The notes: generated by a model not told the origin, from the sequence alone. A DNA stretch of 64,000 nucleotides from Vitrella brassicaformis CCMP3155 (GCA_001179505.1 CDMY01000117.1:1-64000), one strand, 5' to 3'; positions 28,930 through 46,388 are shown, numbered from the stretch's first letter. Program-made: numbers and translations.

Positions 28930-31900
28930 CTACCCCCGCCCCCCTCCACCTCCGCCACCGCCCCCTCCATATCCGCTGCCCTGCGGAAACCCCCTTGGCA
29001 CCTGCTGTAGCGCCCTCTGCGCAGCCATCATCCTGGACAGATCCTGCTGCTGCTGCTGGTACTGCTGCTGGTGCTGCTGCTGGTGCGGCATGGCCATCTT
29101 GGCCATCTGCTGCTGGAGCTGCTGCATGTGGTATGCTGCAAAAGGGGCGCTCATCGGCTGCCGGGAGAGCTGCCCGGATACCGGCATTGTGGGGGGCATC
29201 GGGACCATCTGGGGGTACACCCGGCCGTGGCCGCCCATGACGGCGGGGGCATAGGGGATTGGGGGTGGTGCCCCCGAGCGGCGGGCGCCTGCGAGATCAT
29301 GCATCAGAGAGGGCATGGCAGGCGGTGATGGCCTGAAGGGCTGCTCGACTTTCTTCTTCTTGGCCCGCAGCTGGTCGGCCTCCTCGCCGGGTGGGCTTGG
29401 GGTGCCTGACGGCGGGGGGCTCCGCTTCTTGGTTGGCTTGCGGGGTGCCGGCATGGGCCGCTGGAACTGCATGGCGTCCATCAGGGGGCGCCTCAGCATC
29501 TCTGCACGAAGCTGCTGAGCGTGGCTGGGGGGGCGGACGTTGATCTGAAAGAGAATCTTCTGCCTGTGGATGGACGGAGAAGGGGAGAATGGAGTTGCCT
29601 GTCAGTCTGTCAGTCAGTCTGTCTGTCTGTCGTTCCTCCCATTCTCACTTGATGACTGGTGGGAGCTTTTTGCCTTTGCCGATGTCGATGAAGGCCCGCA
29701 GGTCGGCCAGCTGCCACGACATCCACTCCCTGTCCAGCAACCGGTTCGTGCGGGACACCTGTCCACATGAAGCACAGACACACAGCCATGCACATCACAT
29801 CACATCACATTCACACAGCCGCCACCCCCACTCCACTCCACTCTTTTCGCTCACATTCGACTCGGTCTTCTCGAGTTTTTCCGCCGTAGTGAGCTTGCGC
29901 CCAGCGCCCTCGCCCTCCCCCTGTCGCCTCTCAGCTGAGGTGGGCGACTCCCCCTCACCCGATGGGCCGCCCTCCGCACCCTTGTCGGCCTTGTCGGGCT
30001 GACCAGAAGGAGACGAGCGCGGCCATGAGGAAAAGTGCTGGGTGGCTCTTTGCCTTTGTCAGGTCATTTCGCTCACCCCGAACAGGTCGTCGTCCGATCC
30101 GATGCCGAGTGCTTTCCGCAGGGCCTCGTTGGCCGTGTCACTCGACGCCTTTGCCTTCTCAAGCACCTCAGTAGCCTTGGCCTACACCAGAACACACGCG
30201 CACACACAGAAGAGATAGATGGTCTGAGACAATGTATGTCCTCATGTGACGATGTGTCCGACAGCACCGTTTCAGCGATTCTCGGGGATGGCTCCTGCTC
30301 GTTTTCCTTTGGCTTTGGGGGCTCCTCCGGTGGCGGCTCGTCGCCGCCGCCCTCCTTCTTTTTCTTCTTGGACGCCTTGGCCTTGGCTTTGGCCTCAGCC
30401 TGCTCCTGCAGCATCACACGGCGCCGCTCATCGTCCTCGCGCATCCTCTGAACACACACACACACACACACTCCGGGGTGGCGGGTGGCGGTGGGCGTGC
30501 TCACCTTGACGTGTGCGTCCCTCCGCTTGGTGTCGAGCAGCTCCAGCTTCTTGAGCTCGCCATACGGGCCATACATCTGATGGACGACACACAACGCCAC
30601 TCACTCACCGGCTGGCCTTCCATTGGCTTCATGTACACACACAGTCAGCTCACCATCTTGACAGGCCAGCTGTTCTGCTGCAGTGCCCCAACGTCATCCT
30701 GGATGCGCACGTCGCCGTCGGGCAGCCGCCCCCTGACTTTGCTGAGCTCCTTAGGGCCGGCGCGTGTGCCGGTGCGGGCGCGCTTGAAGAACTCCAGATC
30801 CTCCGACACCACCCTGGTGATTTGATTGACACACACACACACACACACACACACACGGGGTAAGTCGGCTGCGTGCGTGTGCGTGTGTGGATGGAGGTGC
30901 GTGCCTGAGGAAGTCGAGTGTGGTCTCCATGGCTGTGGTTACGGCGTCGGGCTTGATGTCCCTGACCCCATATTTGCTCCCGATGACCTTCATCTTGACC
31001 CCCAGGTCCTCCTTCAGGCTCGCATACGCATCGCGCCTCTGCCGGGGAGCACCCGGCGCACCGGGTAGAGGGAACATGCGATCCCCCGCCGCCACAGCGC
31101 TGACGGCACTGAGAGCGTCGCCCAGGTCGCCGATGGGCTTGTTCTTCATGAGCCCCCCGGTCTGCTGCTGCAGGAGGGAGGAAGGTGCCTCTCGCTTGAT
31201 GGCCTGGGCGGCGAGCTGTGCTGAGGTCGGGGGAGGGGACGGCGAGGGGGAGGGGCGGGGTGGGTCGGTGCGCGGCAGAGGGGGGCCGGCTGGGGCGCCT
31301 GCACCGCTGCCTGAGGCAAACCTCTCCTTCACCTGCACAGAGACCAATTCAGAGTGCACCGTTCATGTGCGGAGCTGCGACGCTCCTTGCTGTCTGTCCT
31401 CTTGGCGACCTTCCAGACAAACTGCTCGTACTCTCCGGGTCGGTTCCTGAGCAGCTCAATGATGAGAAGCCCCAAGTAGCGCCCAACGGTTTGCATCTGA
31501 ACACATACACACATACGTACAGAATATGAACCTCCCAACGACACGACGTCCTCCCTCCCTCCCTCCCTCCGTCCTCCCTCCCTCCCTCTGTTCTCTTGTT
31601 CATTCAGCGCCCCCACCCACCTCACCTGTCCCGGGTCGGCCCTCCATTGGTCGTACTTGCGCAGGACAGGGGCGAGGCGCGTTTCGTACTGCTGCCGCAG
31701 CTCCGGCCACCTCTCCTTGTTCCACTCCTCCATCACACTCATGCACAGCTCAGGCCGCTGGACAAACACACTCGAGACCCTCACCTGTGGTGGACCATCA
31801 CCCTGCTGCTGCTGTGGCGGTCCTTGTGGCTGTGGCTGTGGCGCCTGCTGCTGCTGCTGCTGCCTCTGCGGGACGGGCGAGGGTCGCCGCATCACGTCTG

Positions 31901-32431: not shown

Positions 32432-33157
32432 ATGCCGAGCAAGCGTCGTAACAACGGCCGTTCCAAGCATGGCCGCGGTCACACCTCCTTCATCCGCTGC
32501 TCCAACTGCGGGAGGGCCACACCCAAGGTGACTGAGGGGGGGGACACACACGACACACAGGGACGCAGGAGGGGGGAAGGGAGGAGGGAGGAAGGCCAGC
32601 GTGGCAACAGAGGGCGAGGTCAGCGAGTGAGGCCGGTTGAGGGCAGGGTGGCGACATGTCGACGAGTCAGGAGGGCGGCTGTGGATCAGGGGAGGGCAGG
32701 GAAGAGATCTGTCGGTCATCTGTCGGTGCACTTGGACCGCTCTGTTGTCTGTGCGCGTGTGTCTGTATGGTCATGTCTGCAGGACAAGGCTGTGAAGCGT
32801 TTCAACGTGCGCAACATCGTCGACGTGTCGTCCCAGCGTGACATCAAGGAGGCCTCCGTCTACGCAAGTAACACCACGAGACACACACACACGGAGAGAC
32901 CCAGACGCAGATATCTAGATCCACACACACATCCACTTCACTCCTCTTCCCCTGTGTGTGTGTGCGTCCTTCTCTGTGGCCATCGGTTGATTGCAGCGTA
33001 CAGCCTTCCGAAGCTGTACATCAAGCAGATGTATTGCATCAGCTGCGCCATCCACGCCCGTATCGTCCGTGTGCGCAGCTCCGAGCAGCGCAAGAACCGC
33101 GAGCCGCCCCCCAGGTTCGGGCAGCGGCCGCAGCAGGGCGGAGGAGGGCCCAGGTAG
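32432..33157 (+). CDS. RPS26: 40S ribosomal protein S26 (eS26); join(32432..32527, 32783..32867, 32997..33157)
   Basis: [17 protein letters not shown]...[25 protein letters not shown]...[27 protein letters not shown]...R...PPPRF. Two GT-AG introns. Confidence 0.98.
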   Translation: [241 protein letters not shown]

Positions 33158-34974: not shown

Positions 34975-36144
34975 TTAGTAGAAGGGGTCGTCGTCGTACG
35001 GGGGAGGGGGAGCGGGGGGCACGCCACCGCCCGCTGCGCCAGGGCCACCCGGGGGGGCACCACCGCCACCGCCCATACCTGACAGACACGTATCAACACC
35101 CATACACACATCACAATTCATGCACACCATGATCATGATGTGTCTGTGTGGGTATCCTATCCTCGTCTCGTCTGTGTGTGTGTGTGTGGGTACCGAGCAG
35201 CCCTCCCAAAAAGTAGTTGGCGCCAAACATGTTGCCGTATCCGTAGCCGTCCAGAAACCCCTGCGCCAGTCCCACCGGTCCGTCCTGCTGCGGCGGGGGC
35301 GGGGGCGCCTGGTCGCGGTCAGCCACCTGCACCGAAAACGAACGCGCCGGCCTGCACACACACACACACGATGATGCAGCGTACGAAGATATTCCCTTGC
35401 TCTCGTCCGTTGTCACCGTTTCTTGGCCTTGGCTTTGCCCCGGCCCTTCCTGGGCGGTGGCTTGTACTGCGGGTTGGGCGACGCGCGGATGTTGTTGACC
35501 TTGACGCGACACACGGCTGATGAACCAACCAACCACACGCATACACGTGGATCCGTGCGTGTGTTGTGGTGTGGTGTGCTGTGTGTGTCGGGATGTGTGC
35601 GTACGGCATGAGTTCTCCTTGGCGTGAGTCCACTCCCGCACGCAGCTGTAGCAGAAGGTGTGCTCACAATGGAGGTGAGCCTGCACACACACACACACAC
35701 ATATCAGGACAGGGGAGAGCAACAACACGGCTTGCAATGGTGCGTACACCTGCCCTCCCTGTCTCTGTTAGAAGTGTCGCAGTGTCTCTCTGCCGATGTG
35801 TGTGTGACCAAGAGCCTCGCTGCCGTGCCCTTTTCCCCTCCTACCGTGTACTGGTTGGTCTCGCGATAGATGTCCTCTAGGCAGATGGAACACTCGAGCT
35901 GTGGCAGAGAAACCTCCTCCTCCTTGTCCACACCCTCCCCGCCCTCAGCTGCAGCTGCTGCACCCGCCGCCTTGCTGCGACCCTTCGCCTTGGCCTTGGC
36001 GCCTCCACGCTTCCTCGGCTTGGTTATCTCCTTCTTGGGCACATCATCGGCCGTTGCGGCAGCCGCAGCCGCCTCCCTGGCTTGCCTACGCTTCCCTGCC
36101 GCTGCCGCAGGGCCATCGCCGCGAGTGTTGTCACCCACAACCAT
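34975..36144 (-). CDS. C3HC4 RING-finger E3 ligase-like protein, multi-exon
   Basis: LECSICLEDIY ... LHCEHTFCYSCVREW ... SC|PVCR gives the C-x2-C...C-x-H-x2-C-x2-C...C-x2-C pattern after splicing. The N-terminus is K/A-rich and the C-terminus G/P-rich. Confidence 0.85.
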
Positions 36145-36475: not shown

Positions 36476-39400
36476 ATGGAAGCGAAGGCTCCCCCAATGG
36501 ACGCGCTCGGCGTCAGCCTGAGGCCTTCGGCTATCTTTCCCGAGCGACAGGCCAGCGTCCATAGCAGCCGGATCAGCGCTTCCAGAGAGCCGACTCGGAG
36601 GGCGGCATCGGGAGCCTACAAGCTCATGACGGCCGCCGTGAGGTGAGGCAAAAGGCAGATCCATGTCGGTGTGGTCCTTGTGCGGCATTCACTGTTCTGT
36701 GTTTGTTTGTTTGTTTGTTTGTTTTGCATGCAGACGCTTCTCTGTCCTTCGGTCTTACACGCCTGCCGCCCTCAGCCCCGTCTACTCAAGAGCCAGAAGT
36801 TTTTTCTCGAGCCTTCGGCCTTCGTTCTTCTCGCCCGGCGCCACGGCTGAGAGAGAATCGGCGCGACAGACGCCCACAGACGGCACGCCTGGCCTGAGCA
36901 AGGGAGGGGTGGACCTGTTCCCGAGCTGGGAGAAGGAGAATGAGGGCGCCATTGATAGAGAGCAGGTCCAGTCCTTTCTCGCGGCAGCAAGAATTGCCCC
37001 CCTCGCGCCACCACCGCATCCACTTGGCAGGCGGCTGTTCATTCCTGGCAGTGCGAAAGCCGTGTCGCTCTCGCGCAACGGCAGATGGCTTGTCCTGGCA
37101 ATGATTGATGGCCACGTGTTCGTCTACGACGCTCTCGAGCGAGAGAAGCTATTCGAAGACAGGATCCATATCGATCAGCGGCGCAATAAGGGAGGCGGCC
37201 TTGCGATCTCGGATGACGGGAGTCGCGTGTGTGCGCTGGACGGCCAGGGGGGGCTCCACATGTGGGACGTCAAGACGAGCAAGAAGGTCGCGGGGGTGAA
37301 TGAAGGCGGTGGCTGGATGTCTCGCATTCTGTCGGACGTTCAGATGGACTCAAGAGGGAAGATCATCCTCACGGGTACATGACATTCAATAATTGCTCAT
37401 TGATCAAATGTATGTTTTGTCGGCTCCTCTTGCCCTCAGGAGGAGACGATCTGGCTGTATTTGCTTTCGCGGACGGGAACTTACTCCACCGACACGACTG
37501 CGGCTCTCCTGTGCGGTGTCTCGACCTTTGCGGGGAGAGCGAAAGAGTCATTTATCCGCGATCGGCCCTGTCTCCATCCTCGTCCACAACCCCCTCGCCA
37601 ATCTTGCAAGCGATAGCCGCGCCCAGCCCGGCGCCAAGTCCGTCGTTGTCCATCATTCGCATGGCCACGCAGGAACTCCGACGAGACCTGCGACCCGTGT
37701 CCTCGGTGCCATTCTCCGCTGTGTGTGGTGTGGATGATGGGAGCATCCGGCTTTTTGACCTGATTGACCTGAACGAGTACCGTGTCATCAGGGGGCACGC
37801 GGGGCCTATCAGGGCCATCGCGGCGTCGAAGAATGGTCGATTCATCGCCACTGTGGCGCAACGGACAGGCGTACTCAAGTAGGCTCAGGACCTTGTGTGG
37901 TCACTCCTTTTGATGTCGCCTTTTCTTTCAATTCTGTTGCAGGCTATGGCAAGGTGTGAGTGGATGTGAGGACAAGGCTTTGCAGCCCCACACAACAGAC
38001 AAGGAGCCAAACGACTCGCCAACCTTTTTCACCTCGGTGGCCATCAACGACGACGGCGAGACAGTTTATGCCGGGGACCGCACCGGTGGGGCTCACCTCT
38101 TCTCGACCGAGACAGGCAGCGAGGAAAGGGACCTCCGACTGCACGAGGGAGAGGTGAGAGCGGTTGCGATGAGTGGCGACGGCGGTATCCTTTGCACACT
38201 CGGCAGTGACGGTTGCATGTGTTCTGCTCGCATTCCGAGCGAGGAAGTGCAGCTACCTGGGCATACGAATAAAGTGCGGCACCTCGTCATAAGCGAGAAC
38301 GGCCAAGTGGTGGCATCTGTGAGTGATGACAATGACCTCAAGTGAGAGGGAGACGGGTTCTCTTCGTCAGCACACACTAGGGATGCCTATGCTTATACAC
38401 GTCAGGGTGTGGTGCGTCAATCCCTTAACGTCATCCGGCGGATCTGCTCACCCGCTGACGGCGCTGGACAATGCCGATGACGCCGTCGAGAGCTGGTGCC
38501 AGTTTCCGACTTCAATCACAGCCCTTGCAATGAGCGTAAAGGGGGACTTCCTCGCCCTTGGTGACACTGATGGCTACGTTTGTCTTCATTCGACGGCATC
38601 CCTTATGGCTGCTACCCAGAGCTCGCCCACGAGCAACAGCTGCAGCCCAACAGCCGACCGCATGACCTTCTCAGTCCACTCATCTTCGCCACACCAAGAC
38701 GACTCACCCCCAAGCCTCAACAGCAACTTTGCAGCCCGCACACCCCCAAGCGAGCAGCCTTCGGTGCCGCCGATGCCATCGCCTGGCAGCGAGATTTCGG
38801 GGGGGATGCGGAAGAGCCTGCGGTTCACCGTCACTTCCCCAGACGAGACCGACGGGGACAAAGACAAGAACAAAGAGACAGCACCGGCGCCAAGTCGTGG
38901 CAAAGGTGACGACGCACCGGCTTTAAGGCGAGCGCCGTCGTTGCGGTTGCCGCTTGGAGGCCGAGATGGGAAGAGAGAGAGCGAAGTGGATGCAGCAAAG
39001 CCGCCCCAGCCATTGGTCAAGTGGGAGGCACACGATGACTGTATTAGTGCTCTCGCCATGCAGGTACGCGTATTCACGCCAAGAGGGCGGTGAGGGAGGG
39101 CCATCGTCCCATTGCGTGTGTTGAATGCGCTGGTAGACGAACAAGCGGATCGTGAGCGGTTCGCCGGATGACACCTCCGCTGTGTTTGTGTGGGACGGCC
39201 TGAGTGGCGAGGTGGTGGCACGCTGCGAGGGCGAGATGGGCCAGGTCAACGGTGTGGCTATCAACATGGAGGCGATGATTGTCTTAGCCGTTGGCGACCA
39301 AGGAGACCTCAGAATCTGGGCAGCGGAGACCGGCGAGCCTTTGTGTGTGATCCTCTCTGCACATGTCGGTGAGGCCAATTGCCTGTGTCTTTCCCGCGAC

Positions 39401-42400
39401 GCCCTCACCGTCGCAACAGGAGGGGACGATGCCCTCATCCGTCTGTGGAGGGTCGAGCATCAGCCACAAACACCCAAGGGTGCCAAGTCACCGAGACACC
39501 ACGAACATCCCCCTTCTATCGACCTGACGACACGCGAGAGGCGGTCCTCGATCATGCTTCCGCCAGTCGGAGGAGGGGGACGGCGTCGATCGTCCGTCGC
39601 CGTCCCTCCCCCCGTCCAGCGGCCGCATCGACTATCCAAGACCCGCAGCCCAAAAAGCGGGGGTCAGAGGAGCCCTAAGTCGGCAAGCAGGCGGATGCAG
39701 CAGGCGTCCACTCACACTCTGTTCACGCCGACATCCAAGGGGGACAGGCGGCCGTCCCTTGGGTCCAGGGGCTCGAAAGACCGGCGCCAGTCGATTGGAG
39801 TGGCAATGCGTGAGAGACGGCACACACGAGGACGACCTGTCGTGGCTGATGTGTCCTTACCTTTTGACGTGTCTGCAGTGGCTGGAACGGTCATTGATAA
39901 GCCTCGGCCCTTCCGTGTGCTCCGCGGGCACGTTGGTCCTATCGCCTGCATCTCCTGCGACGACACATGCCACCTGCTGGCGTCGGTGGCCCACGAGGAC
40001 GACGGCATGGTATTCATGATGCGAATTCCATCCCATCGCCTCCGAGTCTCCTATTTCTTTTGTGTCGTGTCTTATGGACAAGGTCTTCCTGTGGGAGTCT
40101 ACACAAGAGACACCCATACAGGTCGTTGATAGGCACTACCAGTCAAGCACGCTGCAAGTGGCCCTGACCAGTGGGCGTCTCGTGGCGACTGCCGACAGAC
40201 GAGGCCGCCTGCTCCTGTGGAGGGTCAGCTCCAGACATTGTTCATTGATTTGCACTGGTGGACTCACTGATTTGCCTGTGCAGGTGAATGACAGCCTTCT
40301 GTTCCACTGGCAGACCATCATCATCAGATTAGAACAGCTCTGGTCCAAGGCCATACAGACGAGATATGACGTGCAGTTTCACATGGACTCCCACCTGAAC
40401 TTGCGTGCCGTTGAGGGCATTCGCAGTGCGGAGGCGATGCTGGCATTGGAACGAGATAACATCATCTCGATGCTCCGCGCGAACAAGTCCCTGGCCTGTC
40501 AACGCCTGTGGCCCGTCAACCACTCCCTGGTCACTTACCTCGTCCAGATGGGCAATCTCCCGGGCCTACAACTGTTGTTCGAAGCCGTTGGAGCGACACC
40601 GACTGGCTTTCTGCCGACGGTCATGAAAGAGACGGCCTTGGACATCGCTTTGAGGCTCCGACAGTACGAGGCGCTTGACGTGATGCTCAACGCTGCCAGG
40701 CAGTGGCGCACCAATACCATGAGTGAACGTGTCTCCGCCGCGATTGGTACGATCGATGCGCAAGGTCTGCTCACCCTTCTCTTCTTTCTATGATGCAGTG
40801 CGTCTGCTGCCCGTGGAGCTGAAGCATCTGCCTGCATTTCTCGATTCTCGTCTGCGGTCGCCGTCTCGGGTTGCTGGCGAGAATCCGCCTCAGGTGACAG
40901 ACAGAGTGTAATATGCAAAGGAGACATGCAAGCGGAATTTCTTTCAATTGTTCTTGACGCCTCAGGTGACAGTGCTCCCCGGCAGCGCCCTGAAGAGCAT
41001 CCACGCACACCACCGGGCCAGCAAGTCGCTGCGTGTCGATGGGGCTGACGCCCCAGGCATGACGCCTGAGGAGTACTCAGCTCATCTCGCTCCGCAGTTC
41101 AGTGATGTGGACCGCAGGCGGCCGCCAAGGCAGCCTCTCCACAAGGAGCCCTCCACGTTTCCTCCGAGCCAGAGTCGCTTTTTGGGCCGCATCAGTCTTG
41201 TGATGGCGCAACGTGCGGCTGAAGATGAGGAGGAAGAGGACGACTCTCCGTCCCACAGGGGAAGCTGGAGGGCCAAAGCCGACACGGGATATCAACACAT
41301 TGACATAAGACATTTCGGTGAGAGATACATGCGAACCGTCGTCGATAGGTGCGCCAGTGATGGGTGTCGTTTCGCTGGATTACTGCAGATCTTCCAAACA
41401 TCATGAACCCAACGGTGAGCGGTGGCTTCCTGCGGCATCTGAACCAAGCTAGTACACAGGACCTCTTCCGCACCCTCACTGTACGCGCCATCCTCTCATT
41501 CAAGTGGCAGGTGCGCTTCCCTCGCTTCTGCACAGATCGTCCGCGCAAAACCTACGTGTCTCCGCGTGCTGAACTGCAGAAATACGGCGGCCCTATGTAT
41601 CGCCGGCGGCTGCTGCTGCAGCTGCTCTTTTTGTTGGTGTTCTTCATCCACTCATGCGTCATCGTCAAATATATGGGAGACGACTGGCGAGAGACAGTCA
41701 GGGTATGACGGCAAAGCACAGCGCAGCACAGCCACATTGTATCTCGTCTGTTTGCTCTGTGTGTCGCACATTAGAGTTGGAATCCGATGTGGGGGTGGAT
41801 CACCGCCGCCGCGCGACTGCTGCTCATCATTTTGTCGCTCTTCCTCGGACTCAAGATACTTTTGCTCGTCAGAAAACGGGTGAGTGAGCGAGAGCCATAA
41901 AGTGATGACAACATGACGACATTCGTATCGTTTCCTGTGTTGGGCCGACAGCACTTTAGGGCGTTCTTTTCCGTGTGGACTTGGTTGGACATATCTGCCT
42001 GTGTCTTTGTCATGGCCTTCATTATATGTGAATACCTCGATTGCGACAGGAGGTGGGCGATGTAGTTAATGGCACATCATTCGGTCCGTCTCTCATTTCC
42101 CTCGTGGCTCTGCAGCGTCGAAGCCATGCTGTCGTCTATCACGGCGGTGCTCCTGTGGTCGAAGATGATATATTTTTGCAGGGGATTTGAGGGCACTGGT
42201 CACCAGATCAGAATGATACAGGTAACTGAATCATGGTATAGGGCTGACGGACAGGACAGTCAAGTGCATGGATGTGTCACGTGTCGTGCAGGAAGTCGTT
42301 TACGACATGAGACATTTCATAGCAGTGATGCTTATCATGATTGTGGGCTTTGGTCACGCTTTTCATGTTCTTTATTTACACCCAGGTGCCGCTTACAAGA

Positions 42401-43853
42401 GACACATTTACGCGCACTGTATAAAGATGACTTCACTTTTTTTGCAGGCTACTCGCGTCCCTCCCAGTGGGTTGAGGCCACGGCCGTCTCGTCAACGCTC
42501 ATTTTTCTGACCAGTATTGGCGAGTTCTACGAAGACGTTGTTTCCCCGGAGATTCAGGTACGACAGGACACACACTGCAACGGCCGCTTGAGTTTTGTGT
42601 CTCCATAACTGCTCACAGGATCCGTCCCCGCACTTCTTGAGAGGCTTCCTCATCTGCGTTCTGTTCGTGCTGGCGACCTTCTTTGTGACGATCGTCATGT
42701 TCAACCTGCTCATTTCCATCATGGGTGACACCCACGACAGAGTCAAGCTGCAGGAGATCGTGGCGCAGAACCGAGAGAGGGCCGAACTGCTGCTGGAATA
42801 CGAACAACAAGTGGTACTCCAAACAGAGAAGGAGAGAGACTCCCACGTGACCCATTGATGCATCTGTGTACAGCCGCGTGGAGCATCTTCTCTGTTCCCA
42901 CGTTATCTGTTTGTCGGCCTGGTTGGCAGCAGGGGGCTGCATGAGCTGGACGAGCAAGACGAATGGGAAGGTGAGCCGCCAGTCGAGGCGAGAATGAACA
43001 GCGTGATAGGCTATGTCCGGCGGCGGTTGGTGTGTTTCTACAGGTCGGCTTTCTCAGATGAAGAAGGCCGTTCGGGCTGAGCTCGCCGAGCATCAGCAGA
43101 ACGTCGACAAGAGACTTGAAGTGGTCAGCAAGCCTAAGCCGAGAGAAGGAGATGTCTTGATTGAAAGATATGTGCATGTCGTTTTGTGCAGTTGCGTATG
43201 AGCAACCGTGATGCGGTTCGCCGGTCGATCCAAGAGGCACTAGCTGAGGACATGGCAAGTCGGCTCGAGGTAAGCCCACATGAGACACAGACTAATCAAA
43301 AGAGACCAAAGAGACATGAAGAGATTCGTGTTTGCAGCCGGTGCAGCAGACGGTGCTGGCTCTCCAAGTGCAGCAGGAGGACATCCAGGCCTCTTTGGGC
43401 CAAATGACTGACGCGTACAACCAAATACACAGCCACCTGTCGATCATCACCCACGGCCTGAACCAGCTCGGCCTCTCCTTGCCACCGCCGCCCACACAAG
43501 TCGACAGCGACCACACTCTCAGCGACGAAGACACACTGGGATCTGATGACCACGTGCGGCCCGCCAGCGTGTTCTCGCCCACGTCTGCCGAGGGCGTCCC
43601 GCGTATTCTCGTCACCCAGTTCGGCACCACCCGCTTCGGCACGCAACAGACACCTGATGGAACTGGTGGCAACAGGGGCCCGGACACCGAGGAGACGACG
43701 CGAAGATGGCGGATATTCGACGTCTTCAGGACATCACAGCAACACGAGCAGTCGCCCAAACACAGTGCAGAGCCTGCAGACAGCCGCAGGCCGTCGAGAT
43801 CGCTTCACTACGAGCCCGCGGGTATGATGCGTAGGAGCCTGACTGAGAAGTGA
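36476..43853 (+). CDS. WD40-repeat, ankyrin-like and six-TM TRP-type cation channel with a C-terminal coiled coil
   Basis: About 14 WD40 repeats (37040-40230; for example RGHAGPIRAIA, AHVGEANCLCLSRDALTVATGGDDALIRLWR). An ankyrin-like ETALDIALRLRQYEALDVML follows. Then pre-S1 LFRTLTVRAILSFKWQKYG, S3 FSVWTWLDI, S4-S5 LLWSKMIYFCRGFEGTGHQIRMIQEVVYDMRHF, pore TSIGEF, and S6/TRP-box FNLLISIMGDTHDRV...RAELLLEYE. All exons have GT-AG ends. Confidence 0.85.
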
Positions 43854-44824: not shown

Positions 44825-46388
44825 ATGCCCAAGGAGGAGTACGTGACCAACCCCAACTCGGTGCTCTTCAAGCCCGATGGACGCGTCTACCACCTCGAGC
44901 TCAAAGAGGTCAGTCAGCTGCACGGCGAGGGAGGGGGCAGGGTGAGATGGATGCATGGCTTAGGGCTTGTGGATTGTGTGTGTCTGTCATGGTGCATGTA
45001 GGGCGATGTGGCGAAGCGTCTGATCACCGTGGGCAGCCCCAACCGCGCCGACCTGATCTCCCAGCTGCTCGACAAGGACTCTGTCAAGAGCTTCGTGTCG
45101 TCCCGCCAATTCACCACATTCACTGGTAGCCAGCCCGTACACGCATCCATCTATCCATCCATCCATCCATCCATCCATCCATCGAGCGGGCCGGTGTGTT
45201 GTGTCCTGTGGTGCGGTGATGCAGGCACCTTCAAGGGCACGCCTGTCACCATTGTGAGCATCGGTTCGCCGTGCAGGCAGACGGGCAGCCACAGTGTCAC
45301 CAGCGCACCTCTGGGTCTCTGTGTGTGCAGGTATGGGTTCCATCATGATGGACTTCATGGTTCGTGAGTACCTCGCCATCACAAACGGGCCGCTCGCCAT
45401 CATCCGGTCGGTCGACGCGCATCACATCGATCGCACTACAAGGAGAACAGATGATGTCTCATCCATCTCATCTACCACTGTGTGTGGATGGGTATGTGTG
45501 TGTGGGTATGTCTGTTCATTCAGCATCGGGACGTGTGGTTCGTTCAACAAGGACATCCCGCCCGGCAATGTCATCACTGCCAAGGAGGGCTCCATCTACA
45601 TCTACCGCAACTATATGCACTGGGACGGCACATACAACAACGTAACACACCCACTGCCCCCCTCCCCTCCCCCCCAGCACATCCACACGGACCCCCAATG
45701 TGTGTGTGTGTCTGTCAGGTGGACGATGCTACGGCCAAGACGCTCTGTGCGGAGCCGTACTTCTTCACCAAGCCCGGCAAGGGCAGCGACCAGCTGCAGG
45801 ACCTCATGGCCAGCCACTTCAAGTCGACGAACGTGCCCGTCTCCGAGGGCCTCAACGCCTGTGGCGAGACATTCTTCGCCTGTCAGAGACGCGAGGACCC
45901 CTCATACGATGTACGTCTGGGTGTGTCGATCGACGCACCGACACACAGACACAGGCAGGGCAGACAGACAGACGGCAAGGGAGGGACACACCTCTTGTTT
46001 CTTGTGTTTGGGTGCAGGACGAGAATAAGGGAGTGATCCCCAACCTCACGAACCTCGCTGGCACCGGCAAAAGCATCGACTTCTGTGAAATGGAGGTCAG
46101 TCACTCCGGCACCCCCCGCACCCAATACTCACAGCCCCCCTGCACATGGGTGCGTCTGTCTGTCTGTCTGTGTGGTGGGTTCATTCACTCGTTCAGACTC
46201 ACGAGTTGTTCCACCTTGCCAAGCTGAGCAAGACGCCCATTGCCGCCGGTGCGTGCGCCATCGCGCTCGTCAACCGGCACACGTCGGGCGTCGTCGGCCC
46301 CGACCAGCTGCACCAGCGAGAGGAGGAGTGCGGCAAGGCCTGCCTTAGCGCACTCGTCGATCTTGACGTCAGCAACCTGAAGAAATGA
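44825..46388 (+). CDS. Nucleoside phosphorylase of the PNP/UDP_1 family, most like uridine phosphorylase
   Basis: DGRVYHLELKEGDVAKRLITVGSPNRA, RQFTTFTGTFKGTPVTIVSIGMG, IIR|IGTCG, ETFFACQRR and DFCEME|THELFHLA are canonical NP-I family motifs. Confidence 0.88.

What the first reader, a model, noticed from the sequence alone, without database searches (positions are those of the whole stretch)
36476..43853. TRP-type channel with a probable double WD40 propeller N-terminus
Seen: about 14 WD40 repeats, a short ankyrin-like segment, a complete S1-S6 with pore TSIGEF, a TRPV/TRPA-like S6 and TRP helix (FNLLISIMGDTHDRV...RAELLLEYE), and a C-terminal coiled coil (43040-43470). Established: canonical TRPV/A/C/N channels carry ankyrin repeats, not WD40 propellers. 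Two long S/R/P-rich loops (about 38600-39000 and 39470-39830) interrupt the propellers and are packed with RRxS motifs (RRAPS, RRSSIM, RRSSV, RRPSL, RRQSI). Inference: a phospho-regulated, scaffold-gated sensory or Ca2+ channel. I cannot say whether this architecture has already been described in protists.
Basis: partly seen in the sequence, partly recalled or inferred. Interest (0 to 1): 0.75.

Follow-up and report, generated by a model that had tools for sequence, protein, structure and literature searches.

The report
WD40-propeller TRP channel (TRPW) gene

Summary
Window 36476-43853 (+) is one gene of 23 exons. All introns are GT-AG and 52-91 nt long. My spliced model reproduces the public protein CEL92871.1 (1961 aa) of Vitrella brassicaformis exactly.

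The protein has these parts, N- to C-terminal:
- 14 WD40 blades, best read as two tandem 7-blade propellers
- a helical linker with two degenerate ankyrin-like repeats
- S1-S6 with pore motif SIGEF
- a TRPV-like S6 followed by a TRP helix
- a roughly 100-residue C-terminal coiled coil

Two S/P/R-rich loops interrupt propeller 2. Only the second is enriched in R[RK]x[ST] (6 seen, 1.0 expected).

The architecture is not new. Two June 2026 preprints define "TRPW" channels in choanoflagellates and many protists, with a cryo-EM structure and physiology for TRPW1. Their Data S2 already counts one such protein in Vitrella.

The channel core groups with the 17 listed S. rosetta TRPW genes (NJ bootstrap 100%). 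That clade excludes the TRPV, TRPC, TRPA and TRPM representatives. The core scores 233 bits against a profile of WD40-bearing relatives, while TRPV5 scores 136.

Verdict: a real, ordinary member of a newly described family. Phospho-regulation and the sensory role are inference. Interest is modest.

The parts
36476..43853 (+). Whole coding region of the TRPW-type channel gene. It has 23 exons: 36476-36642, 36734-37374, 37440-37878, 37943-38341, 38406-39063, 39137-39809, 39879-40009, 40083-40223, 40284-40746, 40799-40893, 40966-41317, 41389-41510, 41580-41702, 41775-41879, 41952-42052, 42116-42221, 42292-42385, 42448-42557, 42619-42813, 42874-42970, 43044-43123, 43192-43269, 43338-43853 (TGA). 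The product is 1961 aa.
   Evidence: The splice model translates exactly to P0001 = CEL92871.1. All introns are GT-AG and 52-91 nt. The public gene call has the same coordinates on CDMY01000117.1.
36476..37043 (+). N-terminal low-complexity region (aa 1-159). No domain was detected.
   Evidence: No WD40 blade or other match lies in this stretch. The first 16 residues of the modelled construct are low-confidence.
37044..38234 (+). WD40 blades 1-7 (aa 160-513), read as the first beta-propeller.
   Evidence: Blade HMM hits at E of about 1e-9. PDB WD40 hits. AF2 strands at pLDDT 80-95. Foldseek matches to tandem-propeller proteins.
37547..37702 (+). S/P-rich insert of 52 aa inside blade 4 (aa 306-357). 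Its coding status is likely but not proven.
   Evidence: GC3 is 0.69, like the structured exons. The open frame is not significant on its own (0.32). pLDDT is low.
38253..40286 (+). WD40 blades 8-14 (aa 520-1084), read as the second beta-propeller. It is interrupted by the two long loops.
   Evidence: Blades 13-14 are modelled with low confidence (pLDDT about 50).
38593..39015 (+). Loop 1 (aa 612-752), S/P/D-rich and predicted disordered, between blades 9 and 10.
   Evidence: Composition S23 P21 A13 and no strict R[RK]x[ST]. pLDDT below 50. Open-frame chance 0.02 and GC3 0.67.
39455..39916 (+). Loop 2 (aa 875-1005), R/S/P-rich, between blades 12 and 13. It carries six R[RK]x[ST] sites (RRSSI, RRRSS, RRSSV, RRPSL, RRQSI, RRHTR in the intron-retained reading). 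It contains the 69-nt in-frame intron 39810-39878.
Evidence: The intron is placed as in the public annotation.
40302..40739 (+). Helical linker domain (aa 1090-1235). It holds two degenerate ankyrin-like repeats at 40503-40700 (aa 1157-1222).
   Evidence: The linker profile A2 hits ankyrin repeats and DARPins at E = 3.9e-17. AF2 shows helix pairs at pLDDT 74-96. The domain is found directly upstream of the TM region in 25 of 150 relatives.
40828..40854 (+). Conserved motif LPAFLDSRL (aa 1248-1256) at the end of the linker domain.
   Evidence: F, L, D and S are invariant in the 7-sequence alignment. FLDS[RC] occurs in 8 relatives.
40864..41313 (+). Low-complexity, partly acidic segment (aa 1260-1385) before pre-S1, predicted disordered.
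   Evidence: pLDDT below 50 over construct residues 167-282.
41317..42810 (+). TRP channel core from pre-S1 to the TRP helix. Segments: S1 41604-41672, S2 41790-41870, S3 41964-42038, S4 42123-42188, S5 42307-42381, pore helix and filter (…LTSIGEFYED) 42471-42536, S6 42634-42729, TRP helix 42730-42810.
   Evidence: Hydropathy. TRPV5 alignment at E = 4.7e-16. Family profile against the PDB. AF2 pLDDT 85-95. Foldseek top hits are TRPV5/6/3, Nan-Iav and TRPA1. Coordinates.
42895..42918 (+). Post-TRP beta-strand motif FPRYLFVG (aa 1713-1720). The family consensus is FPxYLxVL.
   Evidence: Consensus in A1. Predicted strand E623-628.
42964..43472 (+). C-terminal coiled coil (aa 1736-1835), starting at the conserved W-E/Q-G motif.
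   Evidence: A single predicted helix spans residues 645-740 of the construct. Heptad test. S. rosetta TRPW sequences continue into a similar WQG… helical tail.
43473..43853 (+). Low-complexity C-terminal tail (aa 1836-1961) and the stop codon.
   Evidence: Translation.

Best explanation
WHAT IT IS. The region is a single nuclear gene of the chromerid alga Vitrella brassicaformis (contig CDMY01000117.1, protein CEL92871.1). It encodes a member of the TRPW family, which consists of type-I TRP channels whose cytoplasmic N-terminus is built from WD40 beta-propellers.

SHOWN HERE. The gene is one continuous reading frame across 23 exons. The protein has 14 WD40 blades, a conserved linker with two ankyrin-like repeats, and a six-helix channel core. 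The pore motif is SIGEF, with an acidic residue in the filter. S6 and the S4-S5 linker are conserved. A TRP helix, a post-TRP strand and a long C-terminal coiled coil follow.

INFERRED BY ANALOGY with the experimentally studied S. rosetta TRPW1 and with TRPV channels.
- Four subunits assemble around a central pore in a domain-swapped tetramer.
- The C-terminal coiled coils bundle under the pore.
- The channel conducts cations including Ca2+.
- The two propellers hang in the cytoplasm as docking platforms for partner proteins.
- The basic Ser-rich loop in propeller 2 is a plausible target for basophilic kinases (PKA, PKG or CDPK type), which could tune partner binding or gating.
- The likely role is sensory Ca2+ entry in the free-living, flagellated stage. 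This fits the published pattern that free-living flagellates keep TRPW and apicomplexan parasites have lost it.
For: ONE GENE.
- The model translates exactly to the public protein, and all splice sites are canonical.
- The linker domain between WD40 and channel is conserved. It sits directly upstream of the channel domain in 25 of 150 relatives. These include WD40-bearing proteins and a transcript-derived Protocruzia sequence.

CHANNEL.
- PDB phmmer hits: TRPV5 4.7e-16, TRPV3/6 about 1e-12, Nanchung 2e-9, TRPA1 4e-5.
- AF2 model pLDDT is 75.5 overall and 85-95 in the TM region. Foldseek top hits are TRPV5/6/3, Nan-Iav and TRPA1.

TRPW MEMBERSHIP.
- All of the 150 best hits among 1.84 billion representatives score above TRPV5. 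Of the 51 long ones, 20 carry at least 4 WD40 blades N-terminal to the channel.
- One hit, P0040, is S. rosetta EGD76101 = PTSG_00807. This gene is listed among the 17 TRPW genes of Coyle et al..
- A profile of 17 WD40-bearing relatives scores the Vitrella core at 233 bits against 136 for TRPV5.
- In an NJ tree with 200 bootstraps, the clade of S. rosetta TRPW, protist relatives and Vitrella has 100% support. It excludes rabbit TRPV5 and the S. rosetta TRPV-, TRPC-, TRPA- and TRPM-type domains. The outgroups were labelled.

PROPELLERS..

COILED COIL..

LITERATURE. The TRPW definition, the TRPW1 cryo-EM structure (7-blade propeller, TRP helix, coiled coil), its Ca2+-permeable non-selective conductance and its distribution come from doi 10.64898/2026.06.15.732144 and 10.64898/2026.06.15.732245. 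Data S2 lists Vitrella brassicaformis with one PF00520+PF00400 protein.
Against: - No transcript evidence was available here for Vitrella. The 90% cluster holds only the genome-derived protein.
- The tree is neighbour-joining on 221 columns with few outgroups. It has one vertebrate TRPV and no TRPN, TRPVL or TRPS. Relationships inside the clade are unresolved (supports 2-35%).
- In pairwise scores, rabbit TRPV5 (50.7 bits) falls in the middle of the S. rosetta TRPW range (23-61 bits).
- The TRP-box tryptophan of TRPV5 aligns with a glutamine in this protein.
- The WD40 region is no more similar to TRPW propellers than to generic bacterial WD40 proteins. Common descent of the propellers themselves is therefore not shown.
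- The 7+7 split is read from blade count and Foldseek matches to tandem propellers. It is not read from a confident model (pTM 0.52, blades 13-14 pLDDT about 50).
- Conductance, tetramerisation, phosphorylation and cellular location are all untested.
Confidence: 0.78

Rival explanations
1. Mis-merged annotation. A WD40 scaffold gene and a separate TRP channel gene lie head to tail, and both gene prediction and my model joined them.
For: A long, low-complexity, poorly modelled stretch (aa 1260-1385) separates the linker from pre-S1. Two introns in the middle of the gene are in-frame and stop-free, so exon choice there rests on splice signals alone.
Against: The frame stays open through 22 canonical short introns without a stop, from 36476 to 43853. 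No candidate start or stop divides the two halves. The ankyrin-like linker with the FLDSRL motif lies directly upstream of the channel domain in 25 relatives, including WD40-bearing proteins. Transcript-derived proteins of Hartaetosiga and Protocruzia carry WD40 blades and the channel on one ORF.
Confidence: 0.05
2. A true TRPV-lineage channel (or another non-TRPW type-I TRP) that acquired WD40 propellers independently. On this reading the resemblance to TRPW is convergent domain shuffling.
For: The best solved-structure matches are all TRPV. S6 (NLLISIMGDTH) is nearly identical to the TRPV5 motif. TRPV5 scores as well as many S. rosetta TRPWs in pairwise comparison. The WD40 blades cannot be shown to be orthologous to those of TRPW. 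The preprint reports high variability in the domains attached to TRPW cores.
Against: NJ bootstrap support is 100% for the clade with the S. rosetta TRPW genes, and TRPV5 and the S. rosetta TRPV-like domain fall outside it. The profile score is 233 bits against 136. The shared three-part order WD40, ankyrin-like linker, channel occurs in ciliate and environmental relatives.
Confidence: 0.1
3. A non-conducting relic. On this reading the channel core is retained as a membrane anchor for a WD40 scaffold and no longer gates ions.
For: The TRP-box tryptophan is replaced by glutamine. The protein is an orphan at the sequence level, with only one representative below E = 1e-30, namely itself. The second preprint cautions that channel function of TRPWs in general needs confirmation.
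Against: All six helices, the pore helix, the acidic filter motif (G-E-F), the S4-S5 linker motif (RGF..TG..IRMI) and the S6 N-L-L-I gate region match the family consensus. The core scores 243 bits against a profile of relatives, rank 42 of 150. There are no frameshifts or stops. TRPW1 is a working channel.
Confidence: 0.07

Closest known systems
TRPW family: Salpingoeca rosetta TRPW1 and its 16 paralogues, with protist orthologues (Coyle et al. 2026, doi 10.64898/2026.06.15.732144; companion preprint 10.64898/2026.06.15.732245)
   Same: The shared layout is N-terminal WD40 propeller(s), an optional ankyrin repeat piece before the channel, a type-I TRP six-helix core, a TRP helix and a C-terminal coiled coil. 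The Vitrella core falls in a 100%-supported NJ clade with the listed S. rosetta TRPW domains. It directly hits TRPW gene PTSG_00807 = EGD76101. That protein also has about 14 blades.
   Different: TRPW1 has one 7-blade propeller, while this protein has 14 blades. Its second propeller is interrupted by loops of 141 and 131 aa, one of them rich in RRxS. Identity to any S. rosetta TRPW core is only about 25-30%. This protein was counted in the preprint's architecture survey (Data S2) but is not in its trees. Ligand, conductance and location are known for TRPW1 and unknown here.
TRPV channels (TRPV5/6, TRPV1-4, insect Nanchung/Inactive)
   Same: These are the closest solved structures by sequence and by predicted fold. 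The S6 motif N-L-(L/F)-I-x-M-G-D-T-H is almost the same as in TRPV5. The pre-S1 and post-TRP strands are arranged as in TRPV.
   Different: TRPV channels carry a six-repeat ankyrin domain and no WD40. Here there are only two degenerate ankyrin-like repeats behind 14 WD40 blades. The TRP-box W is Q. TRPV5 and the S. rosetta TRPV-like domain fall outside the clade that holds this protein.
Chlamydomonas flagellar TRP channels (TRP11; crTRP1, PDB 6pw4)
   Same: These are protist TRP channels with sensory roles in flagella. Coyle et al. place TRP11 in the TRPW clade. crTRP1 is a weak hit of the Vitrella core (E = 2.7e-4).
   Different: I had no TRP11 sequence, so the relation was not tested. crTRP1 is far more distant from the Vitrella core than TRPV is.
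Tandem double-propeller WD40 scaffolds (Aip1, CFAP52, Gemin5, UTP/WDR3-type proteins, the 14-repeat protein 2ymu)
   Same: These are the best structural matches of the N-terminal model over 750-870 aligned columns. They share 14 WD40 repeats in tandem.
   Different: They are soluble scaffolds with no membrane domain. TM-scores are low (0.22-0.30 of the query) because the model's loops are disordered and the relative position of the two halves is uncertain.

Membership tests
TRPW | Voltage-gated-like six-helix ion channel domain with a pore loop (PF00520 type) | tested here: met
   Six hydrophobic segments. S1-to-TRP alignment with TRPV5 at E = 4.7e-16. AF2 pLDDT of 85-95 in the TM region and TRP-channel Foldseek hits. 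UniRef names it 'Ion transport domain-containing protein'.
TRPW | N-terminal WD40 repeats forming beta-propeller(s) | tested here: met
   PDB WD40 hits at E = 1e-40. Fourteen blades. Beta-propeller Pfam families are on record for the product. Foldseek hits to tandem propellers.
TRPW | Channel domain groups phylogenetically with the S. rosetta TRPW genes rather than with TRPV/A/C/M | tested here: met
   The joint clade has 100% NJ bootstrap support (200 replicates), with TRPV5 and the S. rosetta TRPV-, TRPC-, TRPA- and TRPM-type domains outside. The profile score is 233 bits against 136. Caveat: this is a distance method with sparse outgroups and no resolution inside the clade.
TRPW | TRP helix after S6 | tested here: met
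   A helix follows S6 in the model (H552-590/H592-608) and aligns with the TRPV5 TRP helix. The TRP-box tryptophan position holds Q in this protein.
TRPW | C-terminal coiled coil below the pore | tested here: met
   A 96-residue continuous predicted helix. Heptad pattern with p = 0.036. The conserved W-(E/Q)-G lead-in is shared with S. rosetta TRPW tails. Bundling into a tetramer is not testable here.
TRPW | Ankyrin repeats between WD40 and channel (optional; reported for some members) | tested here: met
   The linker profile hits ankyrin repeats at E = 3.9e-17 over two repeats. The Vitrella sequence alone gives no hit, so its copies are degenerate.
TRPW | Tetrameric, Ca2+-permeable non-selective cation conductance blocked by ruthenium red; lipid or agonist binding in a vanilloid-like pocket | not testable with these tools
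   Known for TRPW1 only. The TRPW1 sequence numbering could not be mapped because the preprint text does not say which accession is TRPW1.
TRPV | N-terminal six-repeat ankyrin domain | tested here: not met
   There are only two degenerate ankyrin-like repeats. The bulk of the N-terminus is WD40.
TRPV | Channel domain inside the TRPV clade | tested here: not met
   Rabbit TRPV5 and the S. rosetta TRPV-like domain EGD76188 lie outside the 100%-supported clade that holds the Vitrella core. The limitation is that only two TRPV-type sequences were available.
TRPV | TRP box with conserved tryptophan | tested here: not met
   The W of the TRPV5 'LWRAQ' aligns with Q in 'VAQNRER'.

The most novel reading that the evidence does not exclude
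The chromerid TRPW has turned its second propeller into a kinase-controlled switch. The RRxS-rich 131-aa loop, and perhaps the other two inserts, would be phosphorylated by cyclic-nucleotide- or Ca2+-dependent kinases. These are the same signalling axis that drives motility and egress in apicomplexans. Phosphorylation would couple or uncouple the channel from its cytoplasmic or flagellar partners. If so, this is a lineage-specific regulatory module not described for any TRPW. It would also be a free-living model of the Ca2+-entry step that apicomplexans lost or replaced.
Probability: 0.12. Interest if true: 0.55.

Novelty: new member of a known kind. Interest (0 to 1): 0.3.

Why it matters
The finding matters mainly as confirmation and bookkeeping. 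The 2026 TRPW papers argue that WD40-bearing TRP channels are ancient, kept by free-living flagellates and lost in animals, land plants and parasites such as apicomplexans.

Vitrella is one of the closest free-living relatives of Apicomplexa. This work shows that its single candidate has several properties:
- It is an intact, canonically spliced gene.
- Its channel core really groups with the choanoflagellate TRPWs. The preprint counted it by domain architecture only and did not place it in a tree.
- It carries the full module order: WD40, ankyrin-like linker, channel, coiled coil.

This strengthens the inference that the alveolate ancestor had a TRPW and that the loss happened on the way to parasitism.

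The tandem propeller with large inserted loops, one dense in basic Ser sites, is a variation that could be used to ask what the propellers do. None of this would surprise a TRP specialist who has read the preprints.

Tried and rejected
- The search for homologous proteins with the channel half, and then with a 20-sequence channel alignment, returned nothing. In both runs 8000 word-sharing candidates were scored and none passed. The alignment contained a sequence that is itself in the collection. I treat this as saturation of the word pre-filter by transmembrane sequence, not as absence of relatives. The exhaustive search found 2398 relatives.
- Rfam on the whole window found no match.
- The linker alone against the PDB gave no hit at E <= 10. 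Only the family profile shows the ankyrin relation.
I used the contiguous region instead.
- The first, unlabelled NJ tree of 83 relatives plus TRPV5 is star-like. It shows only that WD40-bearing proteins are scattered through the family.
- I looked for transcript-derived copies of the Vitrella protein in its 90% cluster and found none.
- I tried to identify which S. rosetta accession is TRPW1, in order to map its ligand-binding residues. This is not stated in the text or in the supplements I searched.
- I considered that the three inserts might be unannotated introns. I rejected this for the two long loops on open-frame odds, GC3 and size. It remains open for the 52-aa insert in blade 4.
- A short literature check for Vitrella zoospores gave no usable statement. 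That Vitrella forms flagellated zoospores rests on my own knowledge (Obornik et al. 2012, Protist 163:306).

Full report
WHAT IS THERE

The window is eukaryotic, with about 59% GC and short introns. Reading the + strand between 36300 and 44000 in three frames gives a chain of open segments that can be joined by short GT-AG introns.

My first hand-built model had 22 exons and 1990 aa. An exhaustive HMMER search with its channel part returned a 1961-aa protein (P0001) that is 100% identical over all 352 query residues. After I adopted two alternative splice choices, a 23-exon model translates exactly to P0001. The two choices were a 69-nt intron at 39810-39878 and the donor at 40747 instead of 40765. 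All introns are GT-AG and 52-91 nt long.

P0001 is CEL92871.1 / UniRef100_A0A0G4EBH6 ('Ion transport domain-containing protein') / EukProt EP00390_P001149 of Vitrella brassicaformis CCMP3155. It is encoded at 36476-43853 of contig CDMY01000117.1, so the window is the first 64 kb of that contig. CDMY01000000 is the Vitrella assembly of Woo et al. 2015.

ANATOMY

The N-terminal half is WD40. It hits WD40 proteins in the PDB at E = 1e-40. It also hits generic multi-WD40 proteins at up to 4e-40 with 80-99% coverage.
- I delineated 14 blades. Thirteen are recovered by an HMM built from the blades themselves, and blade 4 is split by a 52-aa S/P-rich insert.
- An AlphaFold2 model of aa 140-1092 has a mean pLDDT of 60 because of the loops, but 80-95 in most blades. 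It shows 14 four-strand groups.
- Its best Foldseek matches are tandem double propellers over 750-870 columns: 2ymu, Aip1 ('two seven-bladed propellers'), CFAP52, Gemin5 and UTP proteins.
- The 7+7 reading is therefore likely. It is not proven, since pTM is 0.52 and blades 13-14 are weak.

Two long disordered loops sit in the second half, at aa 612-752 and aa 875-1005.
- They look coding. The odds of an open frame by composition are 0.02 and 0.048. GC3 is 0.67-0.69, like the structured exons, against 0.50 GC in introns.
- Only the second loop is enriched in R[RK]x[ST] (6 observed, 1.0 expected, 0 of 2000 shuffles reach it). The first loop has none in the strict sense.

Between the propellers and the channel lies a helical linker (aa about 1090-1260).
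- On its own it finds nothing in the PDB.
- It is conserved in a subset of relatives.
- A 7-sequence profile of it hits ankyrin repeats and DARPins at E = 3.9e-17 over two repeats.
- It ends in an invariant FLDS motif (LPAFLDSRL here).
- The same domain lies directly upstream of the channel in 25 of the 150 best relatives. These include WD40-bearing proteins and a ciliate (Protocruzia) sequence.

The channel core has six hydrophobic helices.
- It aligns from pre-S1 to the TRP helix with TRPV5 (E = 4.7e-16), TRPV3/6, Nanchung, a TRPM2-like protein and TRPA1.
- The pore motif is LTSIGEFYED.
- S6 reads FNLLISIMGDTHDRV, almost the TRPV5 motif.
- The tryptophan of the TRPV5 TRP box aligns with a glutamine.
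- An AlphaFold2 model of aa 1095-1835, built with 43 relatives as alignment, has a pLDDT of 75.5 overall and 85-95 in the membrane part. It shows the post-TRP strand FPRYLFVG and one 96-residue C-terminal helix.
- Foldseek returns TRPV5/6/3, Nan-Iav and TRPA1.
- The C-terminal helix has a heptad pattern.

IS IT ONE GENE?

The frame runs without a stop through 22 canonical introns. The conserved ankyrin-like linker bridges the two halves here and precedes the channel domain in WD40-bearing relatives. Transcript-derived ORFs of Hartaetosiga and Protocruzia carry WD40 blades and the channel together. I found no Vitrella transcript evidence, so a small doubt remains.

WHAT FAMILY?

A literature search found two bioRxiv preprints of 15 June 2026 that define 'TRPW'.
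- TRPW channels are TRP channels distinguished by N-terminal WD40 domains, with 17-18 members in Salpingoeca rosetta.
- Coyle et al. report a 2.37 A cryo-EM structure of TRPW1. It has a 7-blade propeller, a TRP helix, a C-terminal coiled coil and a domain-swapped tetramer.
- They also report a Ca2+-permeable non-selective conductance blocked by ruthenium red, activation by bacterial lipids in a vanilloid-like pocket, and control of flagellar beating.
- They find the architecture across eukaryotes, often with ankyrin repeats between WD40 and channel. They note its loss in animals, land plants, apicomplexans and oomycetes.
- Their Data S2 is a EukProt search for PF00520 plus PF00400. It lists 'Vitrella brassicaformis 1' and 'Chromera velia 4'. 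Both are marked as taxa not shown in their tree, and 'Vitrella' does not occur in their sequence files.

The protein was therefore already counted by architecture but not placed or described.

MEMBERSHIP TESTS RUN HERE

1. All of the 150 best hits among 1.84 billion representatives score 71-104 bits, which is above TRPV5 (62 bits). Of the 51 long ones, 20 carry at least 4 WD40 blades upstream of the channel, and some carry 11-29.
2. One hit, P0040, is S. rosetta EGD76101 = PTSG_00807. It is in the preprint's list of 17 TRPW genes, and it too has about 14 blades.
3. A profile of 17 WD40-bearing relatives, built without the Vitrella protein, scores the Vitrella core at 233 bits and TRPV5 at 136. 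A profile of 19 relatives gives 243 bits. A closely similar profile of those relatives plus the Vitrella core gives its best PDB hit to insect Iav at 164.5 bits.
4. I used the S. rosetta channel domains of Data S1. The best S. rosetta matches of the Vitrella core are TRPW-type (70, 61 and 56 bits). The non-TRPW TRPs score at most 31.5 bits. Rabbit TRPV5 (50.7 bits) sits within the TRPW range.
5. I built a neighbour-joining tree on 221 columns with Kimura distances, 200 bootstraps and a Kv root. The clade of S. rosetta TRPW, protist relatives and Vitrella has 100% support. It excludes rabbit TRPV5 and the S. rosetta domains that I labelled by PDB search as TRPV-like, TRPC-like, TRPA-like and TRPM. 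Inside the clade nothing is resolved.

Limits of these tests: the tree uses a distance method and few outgroups. The WD40 blades are no closer to TRPW blades than to bacterial WD40 proteins. The shared ankyrin-like linker argues for common descent of the whole architecture, at least among alveolate, ciliate and environmental relatives.

HOW IT MOST LIKELY WORKS

The domain content and order are shown. The rest is inferred from TRPW1 and TRPV structures.
- Four subunits form a domain-swapped cation pore.
- The coiled coils bundle beneath it.
- The acidic G-E-F filter suggests Ca2+ permeability.
- The eight propellers of a tetramer offer protein-docking surfaces.
- The basic Ser-rich loop may be a kinase target.

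A sensory role in the motile stage fits the published phylogenetic pattern but is untested.

VERDICT

The regulatory interpretation is speculative. The architecture is not novel as of mid-2026. This is a new, individually undescribed member of a known and very recently named family, from the sister lineage of Apicomplexa.

Noticed in passing
window ~34975-36144, minus strand: The gene immediately upstream (245-aa product, no Pfam hit on record) shows a RING-finger-like cysteine/histidine pattern in the ORF translations: 'LECSICLEDIY…' and '…HLHCEHTFCYSCVREW…'.
   Followed up: no
window 39810-39878 and 40224-40283: Two introns of the channel gene are multiples of three (69 and 60 nt) and have no in-frame stop. 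Retaining them would insert 23 or 20 residues without breaking the frame. Splice variants in loop 2 and after blade 14 are therefore possible.
   Followed up: partly
window 37547-37702: A 52-aa S/P-rich insert splits WD40 blade 4. Its GC3 looks coding, but the open frame is not significant on its own (0.32). It is far longer than any intron of this gene.
   Followed up: partly
window ~32432-33157 (+) and ~44825-46388 (+): The flanking genes are ordinary housekeeping types. Ribosomal protein S26e lies upstream and a PNP_UDP_1 (nucleoside phosphorylase) family gene lies downstream. Nothing links them to the channel.
   Followed up: no
window 30452-30471, 30829-30856, 36700-36724, 45144-45183: Short microsatellites are present: (AC)10, (AC)14, (TGTT)6 inside intron 1 of the channel gene, and (CATC)10.
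   Followed up: no
relatives P0004, P0137, P0040, P0069 (not in the window): Some channel relatives carry many more WD40 blades than one propeller needs: about 29, 17, 14 and 13 by an ad hoc HMM. Multi-propeller N-termini therefore look common in this family. P0040 is annotated 'serine/threonine protein kinase' in NCBI, which looks like a mis-annotation driven by its WD40 repeats.
   Followed up: partly
S. rosetta EGD81237 (Data S1 of Coyle et al.): This domain is the best S. rosetta match of the Vitrella core (69.6 bits) and sits inside the TRPW clade in my tree. It is not in the preprint's list of 17 TRPW genes. It may be the SLOG/NUDIX-bearing protein that the authors reassigned to TRPM on domain grounds.
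   Followed up: no
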